A stretch of DNA of 64,000 nucleotides from Macrostomum lignano (taxonomy: Eukaryota). The translations under genes and the position numbers were made by a program. The notes below the pieces were generated by a model, which saw nothing but the letters and a program-made list of their open reading frames with translations, did not search any database and was not told where the DNA came from. The stretch is taken from positions 741,393 to 805,392 of the forward strand of contig NIVC01000103.1 of assembly GCA_002269645.1 (NCBI GenBank). The letters run 5' to 3'. Shown piece by piece: positions 981-34,558 of this stretch (position 1 is its first letter; each line of letters starts with the position of its first letter).

Positions 981-1255
981 GAGGCAAGGGGGTTATATGC
1001 ACCCTGGTGCACTTTAAGCAACATAGGCACACAACCGGCGAGAGGCATTACTGCATATTCTGCCGACTAATTGCCATTAATTGCACAAGCAAAGCCAAGC
1101 CGAGATTCCAATTCAGCCTCAAATTAATGACTGCACTTGGAATCAAGCCTGGGTTGCTGGCATACCAGAGCAGCTGCGTTACTGCTGGGCTACAGCCCTC
1201 CTAATTGCCTGGTATTAAAAAGCATAAGAACCAAAAGCATATATACCCTTTCCTC
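981..1255. mobile_element. Putative MITE with TA target duplication
   Basis: Imperfect ~20-bp TIRs GAGGCAAGGGGGTTATATGC / GCATATATACCCTTTCCTC, TA on both sides (979-980, 1256-1257), GC-richer than flanks. Confidence 0.45.
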
Positions 1256-1693
1256 TAGCCTAGAAATAGAATAATAAATATCTGTGATACAAATATTTTA
1301 ATAATATTTTTTTATTAATAATAGCATTACATTATAGTTCTTATTTATAGTCTATCAGTAGTATTAACATTTTTAATCTAAACAAATTTTGCACCTTAAT
1401 CTTCAAATCTTAGGCCTAGTTTGAAATAAAATGATAAATATTACTTGGAAACCTTATGACTATTAAAAAAACAGAATGTATTTTATTTGCTAATCTGATT
1501 AATATAAAAGTTAGAAGTGGCTATTAAAGATATTGTTTTCACTTTGTATTTGTATCTTATTATATTGATAAAAACATTTTCCTATGCAGATATCTTGGCT
1601 ATTTTTGTAGAAGACTAGTATAAAATTACCAAAAAGGTTTGTGCATTATTTAAAATATTGTTTTTTTCCATTTCCTAGGTTGAAAAGTAACAT

Positions 1694-1759
1694 ATGATGA
1701 CAAAAATTGGGACACCTTTTGATTTAAATTGATACTAACAACAAGTTAACTTTATCTGA
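1694..1759 (+). ncRNA. SNORD58: C/D box snoRNA, family 1A (SNORD58-like)
   Basis: C box ATGATGA, guide AATTGGGACACC-TT, D' TTGA, D box CTGA 1756-1759. Confidence 0.7.
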
Positions 1760-1974
1760 ATACATCTATATCTTTTTTGAAGCTATTGCTTATTTCAATA
1801 TTAAGTCAATAAACATTATTAAATTTATTTTTTCGCATTTCCAGATAAATATCCAATGAAGAAAATCTTGTCATCAATGATGATTATAATAAAGTGGTAA
1901 GTTCAATGACTCCAATTAATTATCATTGTTTAAAAAATTAACTTTTTGAATTAGTTATATAGATTTATTCTTAC

Positions 1975-2051
1975 ATGATGACAATATACTCTTGGGACAC
2001 CTCTGAGTCTAAATTACCATGACTTCACTTTAACCAGTTACCTTTTGCTGA
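1975..2051 (+). ncRNA. SNORD58: C/D box snoRNA, family 1B (SNORD58-like)
   Basis: ATGATGA, guide CTCTTGGGACACC-T, D' CTGA, 3' element AGTTACCTTTTG, D CTGA. Confidence 0.85.
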
Positions 2052-2620
2052 TTTTACATTTGTACATTAGTAGTTTAACTATATCTGTGTATGCTTAAAT
2101 TACAAAAAGTTATTGCCTACTTGTTTTAGAATCATCAATGAATATTGGTCCTGGAATATAGGCCATGTAAATTGATATTTGGTAAGCTATTCTGTTCTTT
2201 TTCAAAGACTTAAAGCAGTTAATTTGAAATTTATAATAGGGCTTTTTACAGTTCTAACATAGTTTGAAATATAGCAATGGGATTATGGGAAGTTACATTA
2301 TGCATATGTTTTAGAAAATATATCGATAATAGGTGCCGGAACAGAAACACACAAGTTTTTTTCCATGTGCATTATGCATCATATATACACAAAGTTGGAG
2401 ATTACACTGGTTATTCTACAATAAATAAATGAGACACTTGATGAGTGCCCAGTTAAACTATTGCTGTCACTCTTTAAATCCTCACTATATTATATTGAAT
2501 GATACAGGAACTTTTGGCATTGAATTTGACATCATTAAAAGATAGGAAAAAGTTCTTAAAACTCCATTAGCTATGGTATGGCAATATGCATGAATAGCTA
2601 TAAAGGATTTTTAGTAATGA

Positions 2621-2685
2621 ATGATTAAAAAATGCTTACGGCGATCCAACTGATCACTTTTTATGAATGTCACTTTCACCTATGA
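2621..2685 (+). ncRNA. C/D box snoRNA, family 2 (variant boxes ATGATTA/ATGA)
   Basis: ATGATTA, ATGCTTACGGCGATCCAA, D' CTGA, CACTTTCACCT, D ATGA. Confidence 0.7.
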
Positions 2686-2893
2686 CAGGCTATCTTGTTT
2701 ACACTGCTTTTTAAGCCTAATCTAGTCCAAGTTTCCCACATGATTGACATAATATGTGCATTGATTTTTTAGGATGTGTCAGCAGATATCTGCATTTATA
2801 TATTGGATCAATTAAAATCAGTGCTTTTTGGTTTAAGAAAGGTAACTTACTTTTCAATGTACTTTGTTCTAGTTTTCCAGCATATAAAAAAAT

Positions 2894-2968
2894 ATGATGA
2901 AACAATCTTTGGAGACCTTATGATCATCTTGAACAAGACTTAAATGATTGTAGTTACACTGTTTCTGA
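2894..2968 (+). ncRNA. C/D box snoRNA, family 3 (LSU CAGGUCUCCAAG guide)
   Basis: ATGATGA, TTGGAGACC-TT, D' ATGA, C' ATGATT, D CTGA. Confidence 0.8.
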
Positions 2969-3182
2969 GCCATATCCACTTTGAATTGAATTTTTGAAGA
3001 GATTTGATATAATTATTTTAATGTAAGTATGTATGTTTTCAACCTTTTCAGATTTTAGATTTTTTATTATAGTCACATTGAAAGCCTACAAAACCAGGTA
3101 AATAGCATTATTTTTATTTTTGAATTGCTTAATAATTATGCAAGATTTTACATTATTATATTATTCTGTGTAACTGACAACT

Positions 3183-3246
3183 ATGATTAAAAAATGCTTA
3201 CGGCGATCCAACAGATCCCAGTAATGAATGACATTTTCACCTATGA
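3183..3246 (+). ncRNA. C/D box snoRNA, family 2
   Basis: ATGATTA, ATGCTTACGGCGATCCAA, D' CAGA, TTTTCACCT, D ATGA. Confidence 0.7.
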
Positions 3247-3439
3247 GAGAGGCACTCAACCAAATTAATTACAGTGAACAAGTTTATTTATTTAAGAAAA
3301 ATTAATGCTTTATTTTCACTTTTCACTTTTATTTTAGATATCCTGCAGATTGCAGAACTAATGGTCATGATTTACCTTATAGTAAGTTTCATTTGCATTA
3401 TTTTTTGTTTTGCAAAAATCGTTAATAAACATAAATAAA

Positions 3440-3505
3440 ATGATGAAAAAACTTGGAGACCTTTTGACTTCGTTTGATTGTGTGAAAAGTTTTTTAAAAC
3501 TCTGA
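3440..3505 (+). ncRNA. C/D box snoRNA, family 3
   Basis: ATGATGA, CTTGGAGACC-TT, D' TTGA, D CTGA 3502-3505. Confidence 0.8.
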
Positions 3506-3681
3506 ATAGATTTTTTTGTATAAAAATTTGTTTTACCAAAGAGGATCAAGTATTTAAAGTGTTTTTATCTATTTTTTCAGATTTTCACTGTGCTATGACA
3601 ATTAAGGCAACTGAAACAATTAGGTAATTTTTTGCTATTTTCAACTTCTATTTTAGTTTAACTATACAGTGTACATGGCAA

Positions 3682-3753
3682 ATGATGACAAACATTTGGG
3701 ACACCTTCTGATCAAATTGAAATGACCTGTGCTTCTAGTTACCTTTGTGCTGA
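3682..3753 (+). ncRNA. SNORD58: C/D box snoRNA, family 1A (SNORD58-like)
   Basis: ATGATGA, TTTGGGACACC-TT-CTGA, AGTTACCTTTGTG-CTGA. Confidence 0.8.
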
Positions 3754-3927
3754 TAAACATTTTTATGATAGTAACTACATGTATGTATCATTAAATTGTG
3801 TATGTTTTACTAAATTTTAAAAATCATTTTTACTTTTCAGAAGGCAAATTTAACCTTGAGATTAATCTAAGTAAGTTAATTATTGACATGGTACAGTATT
3901 GTATTTATCATTAGCATATTAATTGTA

Positions 3928-4007
3928 ATGATGACAAATAACTCTTGGGACACCTCTGAGTCGAAACTTAAAGCAATGATTTCACGGTTCTAGTTACCTT
4001 TGTCTGA
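3928..4007 (+). ncRNA. SNORD58: C/D box snoRNA, family 1B (SNORD58-like)
   Basis: ATGATGA, CTCTTGGGACACC-T-CTGA, C' ATGATT, AGTTACCTTTGT-CTGA. Confidence 0.85.
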
Positions 4008-4268
4008 TTTTTTTGTTAGATTAAAATATTTCTTGGTCTCATCATTTAAATTGAATTTGTAGTAACCGCAGCTTAATTTTTTAAATAATACTTTAAATTT
4101 CAGAGTTTGCTAACAAAAGAAAATGCAAAGCGTTGGTCAATCCACTCCAGTGTAGTACTTTAGCAATGTAAGTATTGATTTTGCATGTATTGAATATACA
4201 TTGACACAGTTTATCTGTAGTCACTGATATGCTTGCAAAATGGGCAAATACTGTATATAGATAAACCT

Positions 4269-4334
4269 GTGATTAGAAATTGCTTACGGCGATCCAACTG
4301 ATGTTTTCCTTATGAATGACACTTTCACCTATGA
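4269..4334 (+). ncRNA. C/D box snoRNA, family 2
   Basis: GTGATTA ... CTTACGGCGATCCAA-CTGA ... CACTTTCACCT-ATGA; terminal stem AACCT/AGGTT. Confidence 0.75.
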
Positions 4335-4589
4335 GGTTAAGTTATCATTAATCTTGATTATAATAAGAAATTTATACTTTAATTTAATTACAATTATTAA
4401 GTGTATTTTTTTCATTAATAATTGCAGAAAATATCGGTGTTTTTCTAGGCATACTACTTATGGTGAGTAAGCTTGTTGTGTTTTTTGTTAATCTTAAAAA
4501 TTAGACCCCTTATAGTAATTTTATTAAAGCATTTAGGCTCAAATATTTATTTATAGTCTTCAGCAGACAAAGATCTTTTAAATGGTTAA

Positions 4590-4658
4590 ATGATGACAAA
4601 AATTGGGACACCTTCTGATCAATTGATTTGATTTTTAATTCTTAAGTTACCTTTCTGA
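4590..4658 (+). ncRNA. SNORD58: C/D box snoRNA, family 1A (SNORD58-like)
   Basis: ATGATGA, AATTGGGACACC-TT-CTGA, AGTTACCTTT-CTGA. Confidence 0.8.
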
Positions 4659-4855
4659 GTAATTATCTATGCCATTTGTATGGACTCAACTTTTATACAA
4701 TTTACAACAAATTTGAAAATGGTTAAATCATATTCAACTATTTCAGATTACAAAAATTTCAACACTTTCTACTGCCAAATATTTGGTAAGTTATTTAACA
4801 TGAAATTACATTTCAAACTCGTATGTTTGATGGATAAAGCTAGTCATAGTTTTTA

Positions 4856-4921
4856 ATGATGACAACTCTTGGGACACCTCTGAGTGACAGTGACTTCAAT
4901 TTTCTAGTTACCTTTGTCTGA
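4856..4921 (+). ncRNA. SNORD58: C/D box snoRNA, family 1B (SNORD58-like)
   Basis: ATGATGA, CTCTTGGGACACC-T-CTGA, AGTTACCTTTGT-CTGA. Confidence 0.85.
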
Positions 4922-5146
4922 TCTTTGTTTATATTTTAATAATTTTGTCTTTCATCATTTCACCTACTTCAGAGTGAATTAATTAGCGCAAACATAACTT
5001 CATTTTTCTATATATTTCAGCTTAAAGATCAGCGTCCAAGAGAAATGCAAAAATTGATTATACGTTATAATCTTCACCAGTGAAACTTGCAATGTAAGTA
5101 GCGATTTCAAGAATGCATTTTTTAGTTACTATAGCATACCTTGCCT

Positions 5147-5772
5147 TCCAGATCCTCAGTTGCTAGGCCAGCCTCTCAGAGAGTCAATTGCTGGGCCAGC
5201 CTCCCAGATTCCCAGTTTATGGGCCAGCCTCCCAGATCCTCAGTTGTTGGGCCAGCCTCTTACACCCTCAGTTGCTGGGCCAGCCTCTTAAACCCTCAGT
5301 TGCTGGGCCAGCCTCCCAGATCCTCAGTTGCTGGGCCAGCCTCTTACACCCTCAGTTGCTGGGCCAGCCTCTTAAACCCTCAGTTGCTGGGCCAGCCTCC
5401 CAGATCCTCAGTTGCTGGGCCAGCCTCCCAGATCCTCAGTTGCTGGGCCACCAGCCTTCCAGATCCTCAGTTGCTGGGCCACTAGCCTCCCAGATCCTCA
5501 GTTGCTGGGCCAGCCTCCCAGATCCCCAGTTGCTGGGCCACCAGCCTCCCAGATCCTCAGTTGCTGGGCCAGCTTCCCAGATCCTCAGTTGCTGGGCCAC
5601 CAGCCTCTCAGATCCTCAGTTGCTGGGCCAGCCTTCCAGATCCTCAGTTGCTGGGCCAGCCTCCCAGATCCCCAGTTGCTGGGCCAGCCTCCCAGATCCC
5701 CAGTTGCTGGGCCAGCCTCCCAGATCCCCAGTTGCTGGGCCAGCCTTCCAGATCCTCAGTTGCTGGGCCAAC
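5147..5772. repeat. 28-bp minisatellite (CAGATCCTCAGTTGCTGGGCCAGCCTCC)n, intronic
   Basis: Tandem array read directly; same unit at 6912-7326 and 16566-17250. Confidence 0.95.
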
Positions 5773-5821
5773 CTCCACCTTCGCCCCTAAGTGTTTCGCA
5801 CTTGCACATATTGATCTACCT

Positions 5822-5889
5822 GTGATTAAAAAATGCTTACGGCGATCCAACAGAACTTTAAAGTTTATGAATGACACTTTCACCTATGA
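5822..5889 (+). ncRNA. C/D box snoRNA, family 2
   Basis: GTGATTA ... CTTACGGCGATCCAA-CAGA ... CACTTTCACCT-ATGA; ACCT/AGGT stem. Confidence 0.75.
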
Positions 5890-6045
5890 GGTTAATAGAA
5901 ATTTACACATTTTCGTATTCTATCTAAAAAGTCAAGTGATTTCAAAGATTTTTTCAACTTTTTGCAGAAAAATTGCGTACTTTTCCGTGGTATACTACTC
6001 ATGGTGAGTACCATGTTCTATCACTATACAGTCCCCACCTTATCA

Positions 6046-6119
6046 ATGATGAAAAAACTTGGAGACCTTATTACTGCTTCAAATGAGGCAGTTTGATTTT
6101 CAGTTATTTGCATTTCTGA
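6046..6119 (+). ncRNA. C/D box snoRNA, family 3
   Basis: ATGATGA, CTTGGAGACC-TT, degenerate D' ATTA, D CTGA. Confidence 0.7.
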
Positions 6120-6330
6120 AAACAGTGTAGGAGTTTTATAACTAAATATGTATAATATATCTAAAATTTCATATCGGTAGCAAATTTATACTAATTTCAA
6201 TAAATTGTCGTTACCCTACCCATTACTTTTTCAATTTTAGATGTCTTATTTCACCGGTTTTTCGCTAAATAATTGTAAGTTTGTTGAATAATATTTATCA
6301 GTATTGTGACACTTAGATCCTCTAATTGTT

Positions 6331-6404
6331 ATGATGACGTAACCTTTTGGGACACCTTCTGATCTATCAAATTTGATTTTGACCCCAAGTTACCTTTTCT
6401 CTTA
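6331..6404 (+). ncRNA. SNORD58: C/D box snoRNA family 1A, probably decaying (D box CTTA)
   Basis: Near-identical to 7910-7984 but D box CTGA>CTTA. Confidence 0.55.
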
Positions 6405-6596
6405 TTAATCAGCTGCGTTACTGTAATGTCATGCACTTTTACTGCTTTAGATTACAGTTTCAAAAATAATTTTTCAACTATAAATTTTAGATTATCAAAG
6501 TTCTTGTCTGCAGATGTCAGATCAGCTAGTATTGATGGGGTAAGTAATGCACTATATGTTAGTTTGTTATGCAATTTCTTTTCTTTCTACATCTAA

Positions 6597-6675
6597 ATGA
6601 TGACAATACTCTTGGGACACCTCTGAGTTGAATTACTTAAACTGTGAATTGGTCTTACAAGTTACCTTTCTCTGA
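6597..6675 (+). ncRNA. SNORD58: C/D box snoRNA, family 1B (SNORD58-like)
   Basis: ATGATGA, CTCTTGGGACACC-T-CTGA, AGTTACCTTTCT-CTGA. Confidence 0.85.
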
Positions 6676-6911
6676 CTAGTTATGCTTTATATTGAAATAT
6701 TATGTTTTTGTTCCTGGTTTTTGTTGCTAAATTTATTAATGAAATTCCTAATTTTTAGATTGATCATGATCACCGCGAGTTTTAATGTGAATAAATATAT
6801 AAGCCCTGGCGTTAAAGTAAGTTAGTTACGTAATACTTTTTTAATACTATGCTATATATATATAAATGGTAATTATATTGGTTAGGCTGTGTGGGTTGTC
6901 ATGCGATTGAG

Positions 6912-7326
6912 CTCCTCAGTTGCTGGGCCAGCCTCCCAGATCCTCAGTTGCTGGGCCAGCCTCCCAGATCCTCAGTTGCTGGGCCAGCCTCCCAGATCCT
7001 CAGTTGCTGGGCCAGCCTCCCAGATCCTCAGTTGCTGGTCCAGCCTCCCAGATCCTCAGTTGCTGGTCCAGCCTCCCAGATCCTCAGTTGCTGGGCTAGC
7101 CTCCCAGATCTTCAGTTGCTGGGCCAGCCTCCCAGATCCTCAGTTGCTGGGCCAGCCTCCCAGATCCTCAGTTGCTGGGCCAGCCTCCCAGATCCTCAGT
7201 TGCTGGGCCAGCCTCCCAGATCCTCAGTTGCTGGGCCAGCCTCCCAGATCCTCAGTTGCTGGGCCAGCCTCCCAGATCCTCAGTTTCTGCACCAGCCTCC
7301 CAGATCCTCAGTTGCTGGGCCAGCCT
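6912..7326. repeat. 28-bp minisatellite, second copy
   Basis: Same unit as 5147-5772. Confidence 0.95.
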
Positions 7327-7393
7327 CTAACATCTTTAGAGCATCTACCTTCGCCTCTAAGTGTGTTTCGCTCTTGCAGATATTGATCTACCT

Positions 7394-7461
7394 GTGATTA
7401 GAAAATGCTTACGGCGATCCAACAGAACTTTAAAGTTTATGAATGACACTTTCACCTATGA
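7394..7461 (+). ncRNA. C/D box snoRNA, family 2
   Basis: GTGATTA ... CTTACGGCGATCCAA-CAGA ... CACTTTCACCT-ATGA. Confidence 0.75.
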
Positions 7462-7639
7462 GGTTAATATAAATTTACAAATTTTCGTATTCTATCGAAA
7501 AAGTCGTGATTTAAAAGATTTTTTCAACTTTCTATTGCAGCAAAATTGCGTATTCTGTGGTATACTACTCATGGTGAGTAAACTTGCTTCTGCGTATTGA
7601 ACTCTAATATGTTCTATAACTGCAATCCCCACCTTATCA

Positions 7640-7713
7640 ATGATGAAAAAACTTGGAGACCTTATTACTGCTTTAAATAAGGCAGTTTGATTTTTAATTA
7701 TTTGCATTTTTGA
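7640..7713 (+). ncRNA. C/D box snoRNA family 3, possibly decaying (D box TTGA)
   Basis: Paralog of 6046-6119 with D box CTGA>TTGA. Confidence 0.55.
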
Positions 7714-7909
7714 AAACAGTGTAGGAGTTATATAAATAAGTATATATCTAAAATTTCATATCTGTAGCAACTTTATACTAATTTCAATAACTTGTCGTTA
7801 CCCTAGCAATTTTCTTTTTTAAATTTCAGATGCCTTATTGCACCGGTTTTTCCCTAAGAAATTGTAAGTTTGTTTATCAGTATTGTGACACTTAGATCCT
7901 CTAATTGTT

Positions 7910-7984
7910 ATGATGACGTAACCTTTTGGGACACCTTCTGATCTATCAAATTTGATTTTGACCCCAAGTTACCTTTTTCTCTGA
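7910..7984 (+). ncRNA. SNORD58: C/D box snoRNA, family 1A (SNORD58-like)
   Basis: ATGATGA, TTTGGGACACC-TT-CTGA, AGTTACCTTTTTCT-CTGA. Confidence 0.8.
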
Positions 7985-8174
7985 TCAATCAGCTGCGTTA
8001 CTGTTATGTCATGTACTTTTACTGTCCTGGAAGATTACAGTTTCAAAAATAATTTTTAACTATGAATTTCAGATTATCAAAGTTCTTGTCTGCAGATGTC
8101 ACATCAGCTAGTATTGATGGGGTAAGTATTGCACTATATGTTAGTTTGTTATGCAATTTCTTTTCTATATCTAA

Positions 8175-8253
8175 ATGATGACAATACTCTTGGGACACCT
8201 CTGAGTTGAATTACTTAAACTGTGAATTGGTCTTAAAAGTTACCTTTATCTGA
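8175..8253 (+). ncRNA. SNORD58: C/D box snoRNA, family 1B (SNORD58-like)
   Basis: ATGATGA, CTCTTGGGACACC-T-CTGA, AGTTACCTTTAT-CTGA. Confidence 0.85.
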
Positions 8254-8468
8254 TTAGTAATGCTATAGTGCCTATAGTGAAATAGTATGTGTTTGTTCCT
8301 GGTTTTTGTTGCTAAATTTATTAATGAAATTCCTATTTTTTAGATTGATCATGCTCACTTCGAGTTTTAATGTGGATAAATATATAAGCCCTGGCGTTTA
8401 TGTGAGTTAGTTATGTAATACTTTTTAAATACTATATATACGCTGTGTGAGCGGACAATGTACGTTGT

Positions 8469-8539
8469 ATGATGAATTAATAAAGAATTCCTCGTTGTTG
8501 AGTTTGTCTCAGTGAAATGAGTAATTATTAATAATCTGA
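8469..8539 (+). ncRNA. C/D box snoRNA, family 4 (18S CAACGAGGAAUUC guide; yeast snR57-like site)
   Basis: ATGATGA, 13-nt guide GAATTCCTCGTTG, D' TTGA, D CTGA. Confidence 0.85.
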
Positions 8540-8713
8540 CATTTTCTAGTTGTTTTAAAGCAGTGATAAAGATATGGCTTTAACAATAAATCTTGACTTG
8601 CTTTCAATTTTTTTGCAGATCGTCTGAAATGTTATTGAAAATATCCACGTAGTCAGGTAAGACATCTGATGTTGACTGTAATTTAAATTTCTTAATATAA
8701 AACTTTCAAACAA

Positions 8714-8787
8714 AATTATTTAAGCCTTTTCGGCGATCCAACTGACTCAAAATATTGAGACCAAGTGATCGATAATTTCACCTATGA
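8714..8787 (+). ncRNA. C/D box snoRNA family 2, diverged copy with degenerate C box
   Basis: CGGCGATCCAA-CTGA and AATTTCACCT-ATGA retained; C box unclear, 5' end approximate. Confidence 0.45.
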
Positions 8788-8955
8788 TTGAGTTTTTATA
8801 TAACCGTATGTAAACTTTTATTTTAGTAATATTTATTTTATAATTTATTGCTCACTTTTTTTTCAGTGCCTCAGCTGCGAAACCTGGCAATTTGTGAGTT
8901 GAATATTTTTTAATGAACATTAGAAGCATGTTGTGTCCTCATAGTAACAAAAATT

Positions 8956-9028
8956 ATGATGAAATATTGAATTCCTCGTTGTTGATTTTGTTCACTCAGC
9001 TAAAATGAAATTATATTTTTCCTACTGA
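8956..9028 (+). ncRNA. C/D box snoRNA, family 4
   Basis: ATGATGA, GAATTCCTCGTTG-TTGA, D CTGA. Confidence 0.85.
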
Positions 9029-9231
9029 ATCCATTTTTATTACAAATATATAATATTTGTTAAAATAAGCCGAATTTATAATTGCGTTTATTCTTGCATG
9101 ATGACAGATTTTAATATTGACCTTTAATGTAATCTTGTAGATCAAAACGGACTAAGAGAAATTCATCAATTAATTTTAGGTAAATTTCCCAAGTTTATTA
9201 CTTGCAGTAGCAGCTAATTGATGATGCTGAT

Positions 9232-9296
9232 ATGATGAAGAATATTTCGAATTCCTCGTTGTTGAATTAATGTGAAATGAATATAATTGCACCTGA
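9232..9296 (+). ncRNA. C/D box snoRNA, family 4
   Basis: ATGATGA, GAATTCCTCGTTG-TTGA, D CTGA. Confidence 0.85.
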
Positions 9297-9764
9297 ATAA
9301 AATTTTTGTCTTCTTTAGAGTAGGTTGTTATGCTATTTTTAGCTTTTATCCCATTTATCAAAGGCCCCATTTTTTATTTTCAGATTTGCTTGAATATGGA
9401 TATCTAGAAAATTTTAACTACTGTTGGTAAGTAGGATGAACACCGCTGAAATTAATTTTATCAGTTGCTTTTAGCTTTAAATCTTAACTATAATTTTTTA
9501 ACCTGTAATTTTAGAGAATGACCAACTGTCTCTACTACAAGTAATTATCAGCAGTCGAACCCTGCGTGAAAAGTACATTTTTACCTAGGAAAAGTGCAAT
9601 GGTGCTCAGAGTCTGAAGAAACTGACATTTTGTTGTACTCGCGTCTTTCATACTCTTCCTAATTAATCTAGTTTGCGGAAACACTTAAATATACACAAAT
9701 TTTACTTTACAGCTTTTTATTTCTAACAGTATTGTGTTATACTCTTTTATAGGGTCAGGTGTGA

Positions 9765-10576: not shown

Positions 10577-15600
<5,024 letters not shown>

Positions 15601-16565
15601 ATCTCATTGATTTCTGATGAAGATAAATCAGTTCCGCCTAGCGAGGGACAGACTCTAAATTGATAATCTTACACGCCAAACGATTAGTAATAATTTGATG
15701 AAAACATTTTCAAAAAAAGACAAAAAATGTGTTAATTTCTACTAGTGAATGGCTGAACAGTAGCTAAACAGGGACACGATTCTCTTTTTTGTGTTTTTTA
15801 TCAAAATCTATTAATAGTAACAAGTGAGTTATTCAGATTTTTTTGATTTTCTCCCCTTAATAAGTTTAGTTGTTGTTGGCAAAGATTTGAACAAAATCTT
15901 GTCTCTCTGATGCCGGCTTTTAAACTTTGTTTTAATTCTGTTGTGTTGCCCCACACCCTCGGATCTGTTTGTCACTCGCTTCCCCTTCCTTGTGTTTATT
16001 CTGTTCCCAACAGTTTTCCTTGTTTTAAATTTGTGATCCCGCTGCGTCAAACATTTGAAATTCCAACAAATAATTCGCCGCTTTTATTCGTGAACAAAAA
16101 TAATAAATAACTACTATATAGTAGTACTAAAGGAATGTAGCCTTTTAATTTTTAATTTCCTTTATTAGTTTTTTATGCCAGACTGATGTGATGTGATAAA
16201 TATTTGATTACAATTTAATACTGACTAACAGCAAATCTCCCTAATTAATACTACTGATGAGAGTAGCAGAGAGCGTTCTTGACTCCACTTTTATTTATCT
16301 GCTTTAATAAGCGAAATAAGTGACTTGTTTAAATGTTCACTCCTACTGAATAGTAGTATTTGCAGTGATCCAACTGCAGCTGTTTGGCTGTGGCTGAATT
16401 TAATAAATATAATCATAAATAATATCCGAATCAAAGTACCATTACTGACGTACAATATTTATTATCTATAACTGATGCACTTAAAATGTGGTTATAAATG
16501 TGCCTCAAGTTTTCCTCTGCCACTTTCCGTGTCATTGTTTTTATTCAGTGAAATTCTGCATCTCA

Positions 16566-17250
16566 GTTGCTGAGCAGCCTCCCAGATCCTCGGTTCCTGG
16601 GTCAACCTCCCAAAGTGTCAGTTGCTAAGCCAGCTTCCCAGATCCTCAGTTGTTGGGCCAGCCTCCCAGAGTGTCAGTTGCTGGGCCAGCCTCCCAGATC
16701 CTCAGTTGCTGGGCCAGTATCCCAGATCCCCAGTTGCTGGGCCAGTATCCCAGATCCTCAGTTGCTGGGCCAGCCTCCCAGATCCCCAGTTGCTGGGCCA
16801 CCAGCCTCCCAGATCCCCAGTTGCTGGGCCAGCCTCCCAGATCCTCAGTTGCTGGGCCAGCTCCCAGATCCCCAGTTGCTGGGCCACCAGCCTCCCAGAT
16901 CCTCAGTTGCTGGGCCAGCCTCCCAGATCCTCAGTTGCTGGGCCAGCCTCCCAGATCCCCAGTTGCTGGGCCAGCCTCCCAGATCCTCAGTTGCTGGGCC
17001 AGCTCCCAGATCCCCAGTTGCTGGGCGAGCCTTCCAAAGTGTCAGTTGCTAAGCCAGCCTCCCAGCTCCTCAGCTTCTGGGCCAGCCTCCCAGATCCTCA
17101 GTTGCTGGGCCAGCCTCCCAGATCCTCAGTTGCTGGGCCAGCCTCCCAGCTCCTCAGCTGCTGGGCCAGCCTCCCAGAGTGTCAGTTGCTGAGCCAGCCT
17201 CCCAGAGTGTCAGTTGCTGAGCCAGCCTCCCAGTTGCTGGGCCAGCCTCC
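16566..17250. repeat. 28-bp minisatellite, third copy
   Basis: Same unit as 5147-5772 with variants. Confidence 0.95.
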
Positions 17251-19773: not shown

Positions 19774-22700
19774 TCAAAATAGGATAAAGTGTCCCCAATA
19801 GCAGACAAAGAATATTGCAAATGACAGAGGGAACAGAATCCGAGAGCCTTTGTCCACTTTGCGGGCCAGTTGACGAGAGTTCGGGGCCCAGGCCTTCCAG
19901 TCTCCGTAGGTGTACTCGTTGACTAGCTTCTTGGCCTGTGGTGGCGGGTGGCGGGCGGTTGGCTTGTTTAGATATGTACACAGGTAGCTCAGATATGCAC
20001 AGGTAGCTTAGATATGTACACGGGTAGCTTAGATATGTGCACAGATAGCTTAGATATGTTAACAGGTAGCTTAGATATGTACACAGGTAGCTCAAATATG
20101 TACACAGGTAGCTTAGATATGTACACGGGTAGCTTAACCCAGGTAGCTTAGATATGTACACGGGTAGCTTAACCCAGGTAGCTTAGATATGTACACGGGT
20201 AGCTTAACCCAGGTAGCTTAGATATGTACACAGTTAGCTTAGATATGTACACAGGTAGCTCAGATATGTACACGGGTAGCTTAGATATGTACACAGGTAG
20301 CTTAGATATGTACACGGGTAGCTTAGATATGTACACAGGTAGCTTAGCTATGTACACGGGTAGCTTAGATATGTACACAGGTAGCTTAGATATGTTCACA
20401 GGTAGCTTAGATATGTACACAGGTAGCTTAGATATGTTCACAGGTAGCTTAGATATGTGCACAGGTAGCTTAGATATGTACACAGGTAGCTTAGATATGT
20501 ACACGGGTAGCTTAGATATGTACACAGGTAGCTTAGATCTGTACACAGGTAGCTTAGATATGTACACAGGTAGCTTAGATATGTGCACAGGTAGCTGAGA
20601 TATGTTCACAGGTAGCTGATATGTACACAGGTAGCTTAGATATGTACACAGATGGCGTCAAGATGTACACGCAGGCAGCACAGGTGACTCACCATCATCG
20701 GAGTAAACGCCGTCCCGCCGTCTGCACCAACCTCATCTCCATCCGGGTTCCCCGATCCATTGTTCGTCTTGGCTGCCGCCGCTGCCCTTCTCACCCGGGT
20801 CGTCACACGCCGGATCTCATTCCTGGCCATCGTGTTCACCATCGCGAACTCCACCATGGCCCCGAACACGTACATCACCGTGACGCCCATCCAGATGTCT
20901 ATGGCCTTGATATAGGACGCCTTTGGCAGAGTCATCCACAGTCCCATTGACTGGGTGGTCATTGATAGGACGGTCATAACGCCTGGGGATGAGGCATGAG
21001 TGCTTCAGTGAGTGAGTTATTTTGGAGTGTGAATGAGCTGGAAATTGATTATGAATTAGTGTTAGAGATGAACTTTTGGATTATGAAGTATGAAGTATTA
21101 TTGAGTTATGAATTATGAAATATTACTGGGTTATGAATTATGAAATATGTTTGGATTATGAATTATGAAATATGAATGGATTATGAATTATGAAATATGA
21201 TTTGGTTATGAATTATGAAGTATGACTGGGTTATGAATTATGAAATATGAATGGGTTATGAATTATGAAACGTGATCAGGTTAAGAATTATGAAATATGA
21301 ATGGGTTATGAATTATGAAACGTGATCAGGTTATGAATTATGAAGTATGACTGGGTTATGAATTATGAAATATGAATGGGTTTTGAATTATGAAATATGA
21401 TTTGATTATGAATTATAAAATATGATTGGGTTATGAATTATGAAATATGAATGGGTTATGAATTATGAAATATGAATGGGTTATGAATTATGAAATATGA
21501 ATGGGTTATGAATTATAAAATATGATTGGGTTATGAATTATGAAATATGAATGGGTTATGAATTATGAAACGTGATCAGGTTATGAATTATGAAGTATGA
21601 CTGGGTTATGAATTATGAAATATGATTGGATTATGAATTATGAAAACAAAGAACAGCTGCTTGAGTACTGCTCAGTCCCACAGACTAGGAGGATCCTAGA
21701 ACCCTTTAACCAGCTGGTGAAATCGGCCAAGCAAATATTTGACTATAGGCAAAAGTAAAAGAGACGCTGTCAGAAATTCAAATACTACACGGCTACCTGC
21801 TTGTCTTAACTGACACTGTAAAGCGGAGGTCCTACAGAAGTCAGAGTAATCCAAGCCGCTAGCCCCCGCACTGAGTCAATAACTCAAGTTTTTTTATCTT
21901 GTTAAAGTTAAACCTTCGCTGCTTGAAAATAGTAAGAACTTTACCGACCAGATCTTAAGCTGTCAGACGTCTTGAACTGATTGGATTAATATGCACACAC
22001 GGTCTCTGTGCCGCTTTTCAGAAATGCTTTTTAAACCTTTTAAAGTCCGGATGTGACAGACTGACCGCTCGAGTGATCCGCATTCGAGTTAAAACGATTA
22101 ACTTTTCACTGACTTTTATCGGAGAAAATACGAAATAAGTTGGTGATAGTTTTTAAAGTGCAAAAGCCAGACTATTGTAACTACGGGGATTAAGAAATGC
22201 AGGGATTAGCTCGTACCTTTGAGTGCGAATTTCGTACAGTGAAAATGATAGAGAAATAATGGACTAGAGGGAGTGAGACGGAGGGAGGAGGGAGAGATGG
22301 GAGAGGGAGAGGGTGAGAAGCAGAAAGTGAGAGGGAGAGGGAGAGAGTGAGAGGCAGAAAGTGAGAGAGAGGGAGAGGGTAGGAGGCATAAGGTGAGAGG
22401 GAGAGGGTGAGAGGCAGAAAGTGAGAGGGAGAGGGAGAGAGTGAGAGGCAGAAAGTGAGAGAGAGGGAGAGGGTAGGAGGCATAAGGTGAGAGGGAGAGG
22501 GTGAGAGGCAGAAAGTGAGAGGGAGAGGGAGAGAGTGAGAGGCAGAAAGTGAGAGAGAGGGAGAGGGTAGGAGGCATAAGGTGAGAGGGAGAGAGTGAGA
22601 GGCAGAAAGTGAGAGAGAGGGAGAGGGTAGGAGGCATAAGGTGAGAGGGAGAGGGTGAGAGGCAGAAAGTGAGAGAGAGGGAGAGGGTAGGAGGCATAAG

Positions 22701-25700: not shown

Positions 25701-28700
25701 GAGACTTGAGACTGGGATGGGACTTGAGACTGAGATGGGACTTGAGACTTAGATGAGACTTGAGACTGGGATGGGACTTGAGACTGAGATGGGACTTGAG
25801 ACTTAGATGAGACTTGAGACTGGGATGGGACTTGAGACTGAGATGGGACTTGAGACTTAGATGAGACTTGAGACTGGGGTGGGATTTTAGACTGAGATAG
25901 GACTTGAGACTGAGATGGGACTTGAGACTTAGATGAGACTTGAGACTGAAATGGGACTTGAGACTGAGATGGGACTTGAGACTGAGATGGGACTTGAGAC
26001 TGGGATGGGACTGAGACTGAGATGGAAGTTGGACTGAGATGGGACTTAAAACTGACATAGGAATGAGATATTAAGGCTGAGATATAACTTGAGATAGGAC
26101 AGGGATCTTGAAATATTTTGCTAAAATCCCTGTATCTGTTATTCTCTCTTCTATAAAGCAATTCCCTATAGATGAAAGCAGCATCGCGCACAGCTCTCCA
26201 TGATGATCTCGCAAGTCTGCGTGTCCAGCGGAAATCTGTAGAGCCCCATGTGGCAGCCAAGACGAAGGCTAATCCTGCAGATTAAGGGGTGTTTGATTGA
26301 ATATTAGAAATGTAAAAATAATCTATCTTTTTGCGACCTAGTTTGCTCAGAGCAAGCCAAGCACCAGAGACAGATATGAAAGGAGCGAGAAATTGCCAAC
26401 AGCTGCTGCTTTCTGCCGCCATATTCATCCTTTATCAACCCAGCTGAGCGGTCTGAGCGGAACCATACTCAAACGTACATCCAGAGGTGTGTCAAGAGCT
26501 GGTCGAAACCTTTGACTGAATGACAGTCATCTTTAGGCAAACTATAGGTCGCAGTTGTAGCAAAATTGAATGCAGTTTTCTGAGATTAGTCTATGGCTCA
26601 AGCTGGGGTCATAATGGGACATGGATATAGGCATGAGTTTCCGAGACCTGCTAGAGTAGTACACCTCGCCGTTAGGCTTGATCCTGAGCAGCTTGTTGGG
26701 GATGGTGATGTCGTGGTATTTAGCCTGCTTCTCGTTCATGAAGATGATATCCGGCAGCCAGATCTCGTCGATGAGGCGGGGATCAATGGTCAGGCCTGTG
26801 GTGTCGTTCAGAGCAGTCGGAGGCTGGGCGGTCTGGAACTGCGGCAGCGGCTGCGGGACGCCGTGACCCCGCATGTCGGTGACATTGTAGGACAGTCGCC
26901 TGTCGATCCAGGACAGCCTTAGGAAGATTTGGATGCTGTAGTCCTGTCGCGGAGGAAATTAGAGGGGCTCAAGTTTTACTCCAGGACGTGCTCCATATAG
27001 GCGCGCAAGGGGTCTCTCCTCATTGTGATTGATGGAGAAGAATTGAAACAGGTGAAGAAAGTTTAAGTATCTGGAGGCAACCATCATGGAGAATGGACAT
27101 CGGAGGAAGAGGTCAGAATCCGAATTGGCGTCGCAACCAGCTCAATGATAGGGCTTGAAGAGCTTTCGCAGCTCAAAGGAGTCGGTTTGAATAATCGCCC
27201 TAAGATTACAAAGGCGGTCACATGGGCGACACCGCTCTATGGGTGCGAGAGCTGGACTCTGGGGAAGAAAAGTATGGAGACACTCAAAGCGTTTGAAATA
27301 AAATATTACAGAAGAATGCTAAGGATTTCATGAAAAGAGAAAAAGACGTCAAATGCCTGGGTTCGGAACCAGAATCTGCGGAGATTATTAAGCTGAGAAA
27401 TCTTAAATATTTCGGACATCAGACGAGGAATGGAGCCATGACAAGTTTTTTGTATTCAAGGAGAGCAATGGAAGGTGAAAGAAGAATCAATAGACCGAAA
27501 AAGCAGTGGGAAGATGACCTGAAGGACTATACCGGATGAACCAGGGGAAAATGTAGCCAACATTTTAACGGGTAATTAGAATGTAGTCCAGGTCCCCCAA
27601 GGGGGGTCTTAATTGCTAGTCCTATATACTAAACATGGTTTGTCTTTATGTCCATACGTGATTGATTGAAAGATCAAGTTTAGAGTCTGAACTTTTAAGA
27701 CTGAATATTTTAAAGCTGAAGAAAGCTGCTCAAGGCTTTTGTTTTTTTCACAAGTCGTTAATAGTGCTGAAAGCTTTAGAAGTACATGTGAGCAGCTGTC
27801 ACAAAAGTTCCTATAAATGAAATTAGAAATCTCTAAGGACAAAAATACTTTTAAGAAAAGATTCGAGACTCATTAAAAAATAGATTTTTCTTCCCTTTAG
27901 TTGCTGCTTTTTTCGATTTAAATTTTATTGTATAAATACATTTTCTTACACAAATTAGCCTTATTTACGTTAACCAAACCATTTATCTGGGAAGATTGGT
28001 ATAAAACACAACACACACAAAACTACCATGCCGGGAGCTGCAGATTTGTGTGCATTTGAGCGTCTCCTCTGAGCGTAGGCCAAATTTAATAAAAATTTAA
28101 TTAGCCCTGAGCAAGGGGCAGGATGGGGTGGACAGAGGCACCGCTCACTACATCCCTAGTCATGTGGCGGCAGCCGCGGGAGGGGGGCATGGATTATAAA
28201 TGGGAATAGCTAGGTTTATATTATGTCTCTCCATCTCTCTAGCGATTTATATTGCTGGTTTGAGCTTCTCTGCAGCCTGCCTGACCGCTCAGGACAGTCA
28301 AGTGGACCAGAGTGACGAATTCTCCAGCTTGCAGCTTATAGCAATCAAAGTCGCCACTTTCTATAAGATGCCAGAAAGGTCGCGATACGAGGAGAGAGAG
28401 AGTGTGTGTGTAGCGGTTCTCTCCCCAACAGCGAGTCAATCAATAACTTCTACTCATATGAGTAGAGAGCTTTTCTTTCTTCCCAGCTGGAGATTACAGC
28501 GTCGAGAGACGATCACAGCAGCCTCGCCACCTAGGCATTTCCGCTGCTCATATATGCAGAATCAATCAGATTTAGGATAGCTGTGAGCTCTGTGTACAGC
28601 CTCCATTGGTAATCAATTCACATGATATGTCTCAGTCTCAGCGTATGACTTTTGGCAATATATCTCTTACTTCATAGCTTCATAAGTTTGTTCGTTTGCG

Positions 28701-33900: not shown

Positions 33901-34558
33901 CAAGCGAGACTGTGTCAGTTCCAAGCGAGACTGTGTCAGTCCCAAGCGAGACTGTGTCAGTCCCAAGCGAGACTGTGTCAGTTCTAATTCAGACTGTGTC
34001 AGTTCCAAGCGAGACTGTGTCAGTCCCAAGTCAGACTGTGTCATTCCAAGCGAGACTGTGTCAGTCCCAAGTCAGACTGTGTCAGTCCCAAGCGAGACTG
34101 TGTCAGTCCCAAGTCAGACTGTGTCATTCCCAAGTGAGACTGTGTCAGTCTTAAGTGAGACTGTGTCAGTTCTAATTCAGACTGTGTCAGTCCTAAGTCA
34201 GACTGTGTCATTCCCAAGTGAGACTGTGTCAGTCTTAAGTGAAACTGTGTCAGTCCCAAGTGAGACTGTGTCAGTCCCAAGTGAGACTGTGTCAGTCCCA
34301 AGTCAGACTGTGTCAGTCCCAAGTGAGACTGTGTCAGTTCCAAGTGAGATTGTGTCAGTTCCAAGTGAGACTGTCAGTTCCAAGTGAGACTGTGTCAGTT
34401 CCAAGTGAGACTGTGTCAGTTCCAATAAGACTGTGTCAGTTCCAAGTGAGACTGTGTCAGTCCCAAGTGAAAATGTGTCAGTTCCAAGTGAGACTGTGTC
34501 AGTTCCAAATGAGACTGTGTCAGTCCCAAGTGAGACTGTGTCAGTCCCAAGTGAGACT
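30980..34558. repeat. 21-bp satellite (GAGACTGTGTCAGTTCCAAGT)n, left of LTR insertion
   Basis: ~170 tandem units. Confidence 0.97.

What the first reader, a model, noticed from the sequence alone, without database searches (positions are those of the whole stretch)
1694..8253. Alternating SNORD58-like paralogs differ by a one-nucleotide register, predicting adjacent Um and Gm
Family 1 always comes in A-B pairs. Type A has GGGACACC-TT-D' and type B has GGGACACC-T-D'. Under the +5 rule on LSU ...CAGGUGUCCYAAG, A methylates the U and B the following G. These correspond to the human 28S Um4197/Gm4198 pair associated with U58 (older numbering). The spacing difference is kept in all 5 A and all 5 B copies, which suggests subfunctionalisation by a 1-nt indel.
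Basis: partly seen in the sequence, partly recalled or inferred. Interest (0 to 1): 0.7.

Follow-up and report, generated by a model that had tools for sequence, protein, structure and literature searches.

The report
Paired flatworm snoRNAs targeting adjacent nucleotides
A flatworm (Macrostomum lignano) non-coding gene carries five alternating pairs of small nucleolar guide RNAs that differ by one spacer nucleotide, so they are predicted to methylate two neighbouring nucleotides of large-subunit ribosomal RNA; this is a tidy new example of a known mechanism, not a new kind of system.

Summary
Ten box C/D snoRNA units (1694-8253, + strand), each in its own intron of a non-coding host gene, alternate A,B five times. 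Class A reads TTGGGACACC-TT-CTGA (A1: TTGA). Class B reads TTGGGACACC-T-CTGA.

On real eukaryotic LSU rRNA, the +5 rule puts class A on the U and class B on the next G of CAGG-U-G-UCC. This is the doublet known as human Um4197/Gm4198 (new numbering 4227/4228) and Arabidopsis Um2651/Gm2652.

Intron flanks and internal spacers of units 1, 2, 3 and 4/5 have diverged to background, yet guide, spacer and D' are unchanged. The register is therefore held by selection in about four independent lineages per class.

New here:
- A second invariant element (GTTACCTTT, before box D) is complementary to the loop of the rRNA hairpin whose 3' strand carries the two targets.
- Its distance to box D is fixed at 2 nt in class B and drifts from 0 to 4 nt in class A.
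- A4 has a broken box D.
- The source is Macrostomum lignano.

Methylation and expression are untested, and the species' own 28S was not available. Verdict: new member of a known kind, moderately interesting because in human and Arabidopsis only one site of this doublet has an assigned guide.

The parts
1240..9560 (+). Non-coding multi-snoRNA host gene (approximate limits): short exons ending in GTAAG/GTGAG donors, with one box C/D unit per intron. About 22 units in four guide families; repeating unit order is fam2, fam3, A, B.
   Evidence: Sequence reading; unit map; donor/acceptor scan. The limits and the TOP-like start near 1247 are inferred, not shown.
1694..1759 (+). A1: C box 1694-1700, guide core 1707-1716, spacer TT, D' TTGA 1719-1722, element AGTTAACTTT 1744-1753 (C>A), spacer AT, D 1756-1759. 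Partly degenerate copy.
   Evidence: Rfam SNORD58 21.3 bits
1975..2051 (+). B1: C 1975-1981, guide core 1992-2001, spacer T, D' CTGA 2003-2006, element 2036-2045, spacer TG, D 2048-2051.
3682..3753 (+). A2: C 3682-3688, guide core 3696-3705, spacer TT, D' CTGA 3708-3711, element 3737-3746, spacer GTG, D 3750-3753.
3928..4007 (+). B2: C 3928-3934, guide core 3945-3954, spacer T, D' CTGA 3956-3959, C' ATGATT 3976, element 3992-4001, spacer GT, D 4004-4007.
   Evidence: Rfam SNORD58 20.1 bits and snoMe28S-Gm3113 20.3 bits
4590..4658 (+). A3: C 4590-4596, guide core 4603-4612, spacer TT, D' CTGA 4615-4618, element 4645-4654 directly abutting D 4655-4658. The only copy with a clear 7-bp terminal stem.
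4856..4921 (+). B3: C 4856-4862, guide core 4869-4878, spacer T, D' CTGA 4880-4883, element 4906-4915, spacer GT, D 4918-4921.
6331..6404 (+). A4: C 6331-6337, guide core 6347-6356, spacer TT, D' CTGA 6359-6362, element 6388-6397, spacer TCT, box D mutated to CTTA 6401-6404. Probably inactive.
   Evidence: compare A5
6597..6675 (+). B4: C 6597-6603, guide core 6612-6621, spacer T, D' CTGA 6623-6626, element 6660-6669, spacer CT, D 6672-6675.
7910..7984 (+). A5: C 7910-7916, guide core 7926-7935, spacer TT, D' CTGA 7938-7941, element 7967-7976, spacer TTCT, D 7981-7984.
8175..8253 (+). B5: C 8175-8181, guide core 8190-8199, spacer T, D' CTGA 8201-8204, element 8238-8247, spacer AT, D 8250-8253.

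Best explanation
These are ten intron-encoded box C/D snoRNAs of Macrostomum lignano. They form two paralog classes that bind the same stretch of LSU rRNA in registers one nucleotide apart.

In both classes the D' guide (…UUGGGACACC) pairs with rRNA 5'-(A)GGUGUCCCAAG-3'. Fibrillarin methylates the rRNA nucleotide paired to the fifth guide position upstream of box D'.
- Class A has two U's before CUGA, so that nucleotide is the U of GG-U-G.
- Class B has one U, so it is the next G.

Together the two classes would make the conserved Um/Gm doublet (human Um4197/Gm4198, Arabidopsis Um2651/Gm2652). Because A and B sit in consecutive introns of one host transcript, they are produced in equal numbers.

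A second invariant element, GUUACCUUU just upstream of box D, pairs with AAAGGUAAC. That is the loop of the 8-bp hairpin whose 3' strand holds the two targets. It most likely acts as accessory ('extra') base-pairing that gives the snoRNP a single-stranded foothold before the D' guide invades the stem.

Shown: the sequence anatomy, its conservation against saturated flanks, and the complementarity and register on real (heterologous) LSU rRNA.
Inferred: expression, snoRNP assembly, the two methylations, and the role of the second element.
For: - Anatomy: perfect ATGATGA C box in 10/10 copies, CTGA D box in 9/10, CTGA D' in 9/10 (A1 has TTGA), a TGA-containing C' candidate in every copy, length 66-80 nt.
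- Intron placement: one unit per intron. Box D lies 78-99 nt upstream of a polypyrimidine-AG acceptor in all ten, and the C box lies 46-78 nt after the donor where the donor is clear.
- Target: in 10 full rDNA loci the longest run for both guides (12-14 bp, at most 2 G-U) is at GCAGGUGUCC(C/U)AAGG. Position 5 is the U for class A and the G for class B. Other hits are 10 bp or shorter (drawings).
- Selection: flanks and internal spacers are at background identity between units 1, 2, 3 and 4/5, but guide, spacer and D' are invariant.
- Internal control: in the same class A molecules the other spacer (element to box D) drifts both in length (2, 3, 0, 3, 4 nt) and in sequence. This shows what a relaxed register looks like.
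- Mechanism precedent: a U inserted between guide and a consensus D' box shifted methylation by exactly one nucleotide in yeast (PMC5389607).
- Doublet: human and Arabidopsis tables list Um/Gm at this site.
- Second element: 9 of 9 Watson-Crick pairs with the hairpin loop, 2 nt 5' of the D' duplex, in LSU loci L040, L059 and L062. The hairpin was predicted by folding. Chance of a 9-mer complement within ±30 nt of the target is about 2e-4 (own estimate). Extra base-pairing next to the methylation site is an established stimulatory feature (PMC3116282).
Against: - There is no RNA or methylation data for this species.
- The species' own 28S was not available, so the loop triplet 'AGG' and the 'CCC' variant are predictions. 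Only 3 of 23 LSU sequences examined have the matching loop.
- No Rfam family reaches its gathering score.
- Terminal stems are weak in 9 of 10 copies.
- Two of the five class A copies carry defects (A1, A4).
- Human SNORD58A/B have their D' 'GA' in the class A register yet are annotated as Gm4198 guides. Strict +5 counting may therefore not always hold at this site.
- Drosophila has only the Gm.
Confidence: 0.72

Rival explanations
1. In class B the D-proximal element is a genuine second methylation guide, not only accessory pairing. With its fixed 2-nt spacer, the +5 rule puts a third 2'-O-methyl on the loop A just 5' of GGUAAC, 13 nt 5' of the Gm. In class A the same element has lost its register constraint and serves only as a clamp.
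For: - Spacer length is 2 nt in all five B copies while its sequence varies (TG, GT, GT, CT, AT). That is the signature of a constrained register with unpaired positions 1-2. Class A lengths are 2, 3, 0, 3, 4.
- A 9-bp perfect duplex covers positions 3-11.
- The same hairpin loop is methylated in yeast (Am2640) and Arabidopsis (Am2641), 11 nt 5' of the Gm position.
Against: - There are only about four independent B lineages.
- The predicted site (-13) is not the yeast/plant site (-11).
- No Nm is reported in this loop in human or Drosophila.
- Simultaneous use of both guides on segments 2 nt apart may be sterically awkward.
Confidence: 0.4
2. Both classes methylate the same nucleotide, the conserved Gm. 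The extra U in class A is tolerated slack, so A and B are simply redundant copies.
For: - Human SNORD58A/B carry ACC-UU-UGGA, the class A register, but are annotated as Gm4198 guides.
- Drosophila has only the Gm.
- Non-canonical site choice is documented for some D' contexts.
Against: - The slack cases involve a C as the last guide nucleotide or a D' box lacking its 5' C. Here the last guide nucleotide is U and D' is consensus CUGA, and in exactly that context a one-U insertion moved the site.
- Redundant copies would not keep two distinct spacer lengths unchanged while everything around them is saturated.
Confidence: 0.1
3. Class A is a decaying, non-functional lineage, and the pattern merely reflects tandem duplication of one ancestral A-B unit.
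For: - A1 has a UUGA D' box and a mutated second element. A4 has lost box D. No B copy has a defect.
- The alternation itself is explained by duplication of the unit.
Against: - A2, A3 and A5 are intact.
- C box, 10-nt guide core, TT spacer and D' survive unchanged in four lineages whose flanks are randomised.
- Gene conversion is unlikely because the internal spacers were not homogenised.
Confidence: 0.08
4. These are not snoRNAs: the motif belongs to a dispersed repeat or is a chance feature of an AT-rich repeat array.
For: The window is extremely repeat-rich, and no Rfam family reaches its gathering score.
Against: - Box architecture, one-per-intron placement at the canonical distance, and 12-14 bp complementarity to a known methylated rRNA site all fit snoRNAs.
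- Three further guide families in the same gene also match conserved rRNA sites.
- The motif is absent from the other 54 kb.
Confidence: 0.03

Closest known systems
Human SNORD58A/B/C (U58; Rfam RF00151)
   Same: Same rRNA target stretch (guide …UUAGGACACC…) and the same Um/Gm doublet. Several intronic paralogs. One source assigns paralog 58C to the U and 58A/B to the G.
   Different: - Rfam score here is 20-21 bits against a gathering score of 42.
- The human D' is degenerate (UGGA in the consensus), so its register is ambiguous and the Um guide is listed as 'unknown' in a 2024 table. Here both registers have consensus CUGA.
- Human copies sit in RPL17. These sit in a non-coding multi-snoRNA gene.
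- No counterpart of the GUUACCUUU element was seen in the Rfam SNORD58 consensus.
Arabidopsis snoR10 (Um2651), with the unassigned Gm2652
   Same: Homologous doublet. A dedicated guide is assigned to the U, the function predicted for class A.
   Different: In Arabidopsis the G has 'snoRNA not found'. The snoR10 sequence could not be retrieved here, so its register and architecture were not compared.
Drosophila snoRNA:CD32a/b (formerly Me28S-G3113; Rfam RF00531)
   Same: The guide …CUUGGGACACC-U-AUGA has the same GGG variant and the same one-nucleotide spacer as class B. It guides Gm3184, the homologue of human Gm4198.
   Different: Rfam score is 20 bits against a gathering score of 70. No class A-like partner and no Um are reported in the fly.
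Yeast snR13, snR48, U18, U24: one snoRNA modifying two nearby sites through an unusual C'/D' motif (PMC5389607)
   Same: Solves the same problem: two methyl groups within one target region.
   Different: Yeast uses a single RNA with a non-consensus or extended D' box. Here there are two RNAs with consensus D' boxes and a 1-nt spacer difference.
Extra base-pairing snoRNAs (snR75, snR76, snR70, human U16 and others; PMC3116282)
   Same: A conserved non-guide element complementary to rRNA right next to the methylation site.
   Different: Here the element occupies the position of the D-box guide and targets a hairpin loop. Stimulation of methylation is untested.
Non-coding multi-snoRNA host genes (Drosophila Uhg genes; vertebrate GAS5/SNHG type)
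   Same: Short poorly conserved exons, one snoRNA per intron, and tandemly amplified isoforms. This comparison rests on general knowledge.
   Different: This is a flatworm gene with the repeating unit fam2-fam3-A-B and minisatellites inside two introns. It was not found described in the searched literature.

Membership tests
Box C/D snoRNA (class) | C box RUGAUGA near the 5' end and D box CUGA near the 3' end | tested here: met
   ATGATGA in 10/10 copies. CTGA in 9/10 (A4 has CTTA)..
Box C/D snoRNA (class) | Internal D' and C' boxes | tested here: met
   D' is CTGA in 9 copies and TTGA in 1, invariant in position. A conserved TGA (C' core) lies 5-25 nt downstream in all ten. The C' boxes are degenerate, as is usual.
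Box C/D snoRNA (class) | At least 10 bp of complementarity to rRNA ending 1-2 nt from D/D', placing a known methylated nucleotide at position 5 | tested here: met
   11-14 bp on heterologous LSU rRNA. Position 5 is the U (class A) or the G (class B) of the known doublet. The species' own rRNA was not available.
Box C/D snoRNA (class) | Terminal stem bringing the C and D boxes together | tested here: inconclusive
   7 bp in A3, only 2-4 bp elsewhere.
Box C/D snoRNA (class) | Intronic position about 60-100 nt upstream of the 3' splice site (animal intronic snoRNAs) | tested here: met
   78-99 nt in all ten copies. Splice sites are predicted from sequence only.
Box C/D snoRNA (class) | Stable expression and binding by fibrillarin, Nop56, Nop58 and Snu13 | not testable with these tools
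   No RNA or protein data.
SNORD58 (Rfam RF00151) | Covariance-model score at or above the gathering threshold (42 bits) | tested here: not met
   21.3 bits (A1) and 20.1 bits (B2). Nothing at gathering threshold.
SNORD58 (Rfam RF00151) | D' guide directed at LSU GGUGUCC(U/C)AAG (human Gm4198/Um4197 site) | tested here: met
   Human 58A/B guide sequence.
snoMe28S-Gm3113 (Rfam RF00531) | Covariance-model score at or above the gathering threshold (70 bits) | tested here: not met
   20.3 bits. The guide and the 1-nt spacer match class B.
snoRNAs with extra base-pairing (van Nues et al. 2011) | Conserved element outside the active guide, complementary to rRNA adjacent to the methylation site | tested here: met
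   GTTACCTTT is present in 9/10 copies (1 mismatch in A1). It forms 9 bp with AAAGGUAAC, 2 nt 5' of the D' duplex, in L040, L059 and L062.
snoRNAs with extra base-pairing (van Nues et al. 2011) | The element stimulates methylation | not testable with these tools
   Needs mutational analysis.

The most novel reading that the evidence does not exclude
The A/B pair is a division of labour on one rRNA hairpin. Both classes dock on the hairpin loop through a shared accessory element and invade the stem. Class A writes the Um. Class B writes the Gm and, through its register-locked D guide, a third methyl on the loop A.

If this is right, the unassigned half of the doublet in other species (human Um4227, Arabidopsis Gm2652) is probably made the same way. 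That would mean an overlooked register-shifted paralog, or a D' box read in two registers. The flatworm cluster would then be the clean natural experiment that shows it.
Probability: 0.3. Interest if true: 0.55.

Novelty: new member of a known kind. Interest (0 to 1): 0.4.

Why it matters
Adjacent 2'-O-methyl doublets pose a small puzzle, because one guide in one register marks one nucleotide.

For this particular doublet the puzzle is still open in the two best-mapped systems:
- Human tables give the G to SNORD58 and list the U's guide as unknown.
- Arabidopsis gives the U to snoR10 and finds no guide for the G.

The flatworm locus encodes both registers explicitly, with consensus D' boxes, and keeps them apart under selection. 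It therefore shows one simple way the doublet can be made and gives a direct, cheap prediction for RiboMeth-seq.

It is also the first look (within the literature searched) at a snoRNA host gene in a flatworm. It adds an example where accessory pairing targets the loop of the very hairpin that the guide must open.

Tried and rejected
- Rfam at gathering threshold gave no hits in the whole window. The permissive search gave only sub-threshold C/D hits, so formal family membership was rejected.
- I first looked for a distant target of AGTTACCTTT (the H69 region UUAAGGUAGCC, SSU GCGGUAAUU, and the AAAAGGGUAAAAG stretch downstream). These give 8 bp or fewer, with wobbles or mismatches, and were dropped in favour of the perfect 9-bp loop site.
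- A branch-point role for the element was rejected. It lies about 80-100 nt from the acceptor and does not fit yUnAy.
- Gene conversion as the cause of the conservation was rejected because the internal spacers are not homogenised.
- Two protein searches (a USP exon and the ALMS-motif ORF) found nothing, as did one exact-protein look-up. The piggyBac ORF finally identified the species.
- I could not obtain the M. lignano 28S, the human SNORD58C sequence or the Arabidopsis snoR10 sequence.
- No eukaryotic genome collection can be searched by DNA here, so orthologous loci in other flatworms were not examined.
- The weak plasmodium_snoR28 hit at 8626-8702 spans an exon-donor junction and was treated as chance.

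Full report
**What is in the sequence**

The first 9.5 kb of the window is an AT-rich block (28-40% G+C, against about 45% elsewhere). It reads as a chain of short exons ending in GTAAG-type donors, with one box C/D-like unit per intron.

GGGACACC occurs ten times, all on the + strand between 1709 and 8199. About 1.5 are expected, and no shuffle in 100 reaches ten.

Each site lies in a 66-80 nt unit with this layout:
- a perfect ATGATGA C box;
- a guide ending …TTGGGACACC;
- a short U spacer;
- CTGA (D');
- a TGA-containing C' candidate;
- an invariant AGTTACCTTT;
- a terminal CTGA (D).

The units alternate strictly. Class A (TT spacer) starts at 1694, 3682, 4590, 6331 and 7910. Class B (T spacer) starts at 1975, 3928, 4856, 6597 and 8175. 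The finding's coordinates run exactly from the C box of A1 to the D box of B5.

Three details differ from the finding:
- A1's D' box is TTGA.
- A4's box D is CTTA.
- Units 4 and 5 are recent duplicates.

**Is it more than inheritance by duplication?**

Pairwise identity was measured for the 80 nt upstream, the 80 nt downstream and the internal spacer. It is about 0.5, the background for this composition, between units 1, 2, 3 and 4/5. It is 0.74-1.0 only between units 4 and 5.

So there are about four old, independent lineages per class. In all of them the C box, guide core, spacer, D', second element and D box are unchanged.

The same molecules supply an internal control. In class A the other spacer (second element to box D) has drifted to 2, 3, 0, 3 and 4 nt with different sequences. 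The D' spacer has not drifted. The one-nucleotide register difference is therefore maintained by selection. Gene conversion would also have homogenised the internal spacers, and it did not.

**Are they real intronic snoRNAs?**

In all ten units box D lies 78-99 nt upstream of a polypyrimidine-AG acceptor. Where the donor is clear, the C box lies 46-78 nt after it. This is the geometry expected for splicing-coupled processing of animal intronic snoRNAs (general knowledge). Terminal stems are weak except in A3.

Three more guide families share the gene:
- fam3 matches LSU AGGUCUCCAAG.
- fam4 matches SSU AACGAGGAAUUC.
- fam2 matches SSU UUGGAUCG….

Rfam gives nothing at gathering threshold. It gives only weak hits to SNORD58 (21 and 20 bits, against 42) and Drosophila snoMe28S-Gm3113 (20 bits, against 70). 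Formal family membership is therefore not met, although the guide is the same.

**Target and register**

I fetched eukaryotic LSU rRNA from metagenome contigs with the predicted target motif. Of the 120 fetched stretches, 24 carry the LSU site, and 23 of these have enough upstream sequence to read the context. Both GGUGUCCCAAGG and GGUGUCCUAAGG occur.

In ten long rDNA loci the longest complementarity of both guides is at this site:
- Class A pairs for 11-13 bp starting at guide position 2.
- Class B pairs for 13-14 bp starting at position 1.
- Other sites give 10 bp or fewer.

Counting five positions up from D' gives the U of CAGG-U-G-UCC for class A and the following G for class B.

Spacing to the P-loop Gm is 32 nt in Drosophila, human and Arabidopsis. 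That identifies the doublet as human Um4197/Gm4198 (4227/4228 in the newer numbering) and Arabidopsis Um2651/Gm2652.

The +5 reading is backed by a direct experiment. In yeast, inserting one U between a guide and a consensus D' box moved methylation by one nucleotide. The known exceptions involve a terminal C in the guide or a D' box lacking its 5' C (PMC5389607). Neither applies here.

GTTACCTTT is invariant in nine copies and has one change in A1. It is perfectly complementary to AAAGGUAAC, which lies two nucleotides 5' of the D' duplex in LSU loci L040, L059 and L062.

Folding that rRNA stretch gives an 8-bp hairpin, ACAUCUGU/GCAGGUGU, with an 11-nt loop. The two target nucleotides are in the 3' strand of the stem, and the element covers nine of the eleven loop nucleotides.

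The loop triplet varies between eukaryotes. Three of 23 sequences have the matching AGG, and two of those (L059 and L062) also have the CCC that matches the guide perfectly. This is a testable prediction for the source species' 28S.

Conserved 'extra base-pairing' next to a methylation site is known and stimulates methylation up to five-fold (PMC3116282). My reading is that the element is a single-stranded foothold that helps the D' guide open the hairpin.

Family 2 in the same gene has the same two-adjacent-segments layout on SSU rRNA.

**A class asymmetry**

The spacer between this element and box D is 2 nt in all five B copies, with varying sequence. In class A it ranges from 0 to 4 nt.

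A fixed length with a free sequence is what a working methylation guide looks like. Class B may therefore also methylate the loop A just 5' of GGUAAC, 13 nt 5' of the Gm.

The same loop is methylated in yeast (Am2640) and Arabidopsis (Am2641), at 11 nt 5' of the Gm position. There is precedent for the loop as a target, but not for this exact position. With only about four independent lineages I rate this at 0.4.

**Comparison with what is known**

- The doublet is ancient: it is present in plants and humans.
- In Arabidopsis the U is assigned to snoR10 and the G has 'snoRNA not found'.
- In human tables the G is assigned to SNORD58A/B/C and the U is 'unknown'. snoSeeker assigned SNORD58C to Um4197.
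- Human 58A/B read …UUAGGACACC-UU-UG(GA). Their GA is in the class A register with a degenerate D', so the human register is ambiguous.
- Drosophila has only the Gm (Gm3184, CD32a/b). The Rfam model of that family has the class B spacing.

The flatworm thus encodes both registers explicitly. Whether this arose by subfunctionalisation of a dual-register ancestor or by neofunctionalisation of a Gm guide cannot be decided from one locus.

**Source organism**

The piggyBac-like ORF (13454-14785, minus strand) and a Cys-loop channel exon (20636-20977, minus strand) are 99% and 97% identical to one UniRef protein of Macrostomum lignano (taxonomy).

I found no flatworm snoRNA or rRNA-methylation map in the searchable literature.

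**Verdict**

It is a new member of a known kind: box C/D guides for a known, conserved doublet, using a known rule. It has two modestly new features: paired register-shifted paralogs with consensus D' boxes, and accessory pairing to the loop of the target hairpin.

Nothing about expression or methylation is shown.

Noticed in passing
window 2622-2687, 3184-3248, 4270-4336, 5823-5892, 7395-7464; degenerate copy about 8716-8788: Family 2 box C/D units have a non-canonical C box (GTGATTA/ATGATTA) and D box (ATGA). The D' guide GCTTACGGCGATCCAA matches SSU UUGGAUCG.CG. The D-proximal CTTTCACCT matches AGGUGAAA only 3 nt upstream on the same SSU stretch. This is the same 'two adjacent segments' layout as family 1. 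D' is CTGA in some copies and CAGA in others.
   Followed up: partly
window 2894-2968, 3440-3505, 6046-6119, 7640-7713: Family 3 units: the guide AACTTGGAGACCTT gives 11 perfect bp with LSU AGGUCUCCAAG. Their D' boxes are degenerate (ATGA, TTGA, ATTA), and copy 7640 lacks a CTGA box D within the window scanned.
   Followed up: partly
window 8469-8539, 8956-9028, 9232-9296: Family 4 units: the guide GAATTCCTCGTTGTTGA gives 12-13 perfect bp with SSU AACGAGGAAUUC, near the 3' end of 18S. There are three copies at the 3' end of the host gene, outside the fam2-fam3-A-B repeat.
   Followed up: partly
window 5143-5776 and 6913-7327; also 16562-17233: A 28-nt minisatellite (CCTCAGTTGCTGGGCCAGCCTCCCAGAT; 22 and 15 copies) sits inside the two host-gene introns that precede family 2 copies d and e. 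It recurs 9 kb downstream outside the gene. It produces long spurious ORFs.
   Followed up: no
window 6401-6404 (A4) and 1719-1722, 1744-1753 (A1): Only class A copies carry defects. A4's box D is CTGA>CTTA, with a 1-nt deletion relative to its recent twin A5. A1 has a TTGA D' box and a C>A change in the accessory element. No class B copy is damaged, which hints at weaker constraint on the Um guide.
   Followed up: yes
Rfam SNORD58 consensus and human 58A/B 5' sequences: Human SNORD58A/B read GGACACC-UU-UGGA. Their D' 'GA' is in the class A (U-targeting) register, although they are annotated as Gm4198 guides. The human assignment of this doublet may deserve a second look.
   Followed up: partly
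window 13454-14785 (-) and 20636-20977 (-), 26542-26874 (-): The UniRef Macrostomum lignano protein P0001 fuses a Cys-loop neurotransmitter-gated channel exon with an intronic piggyBac-like transposase ORF. This is probably a gene-model artefact in the public annotation.
   Followed up: partly
window 36089-39955 (-): A 1288-aa open frame has an acidic/RG-rich N-terminal part, a transmembrane-containing middle part and a DTG-type aspartic protease motif at its end. It looks like part of a retroelement. It was not analysed further or assembled.
   Followed up: no
window 41098-42213 (-): An intact-looking mariner/Mos1-type transposase ORF (HTH_48 and Transposase_1 Pfam matches).
   Followed up: no
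window about 9750-64000: Minisatellite density is very high: more than 30 arrays with periods of 4-136 nt, several longer than 1 kb (for example 10916-12798 and 30981-34558). Many lie within introns of protein-coding genes (USP-type hydrolase exons 52747-56276, ALMS-motif ORF 46718-48163).
   Followed up: no
window 1240-1262: A pyrimidine tract, CCCTTTCCTCTAGCC, lies upstream of the first snoRNA intron. It could be a TOP-like transcription start of the host gene. No donor site was found between it and A1, so the 5' end of the gene is unresolved.
   Followed up: no
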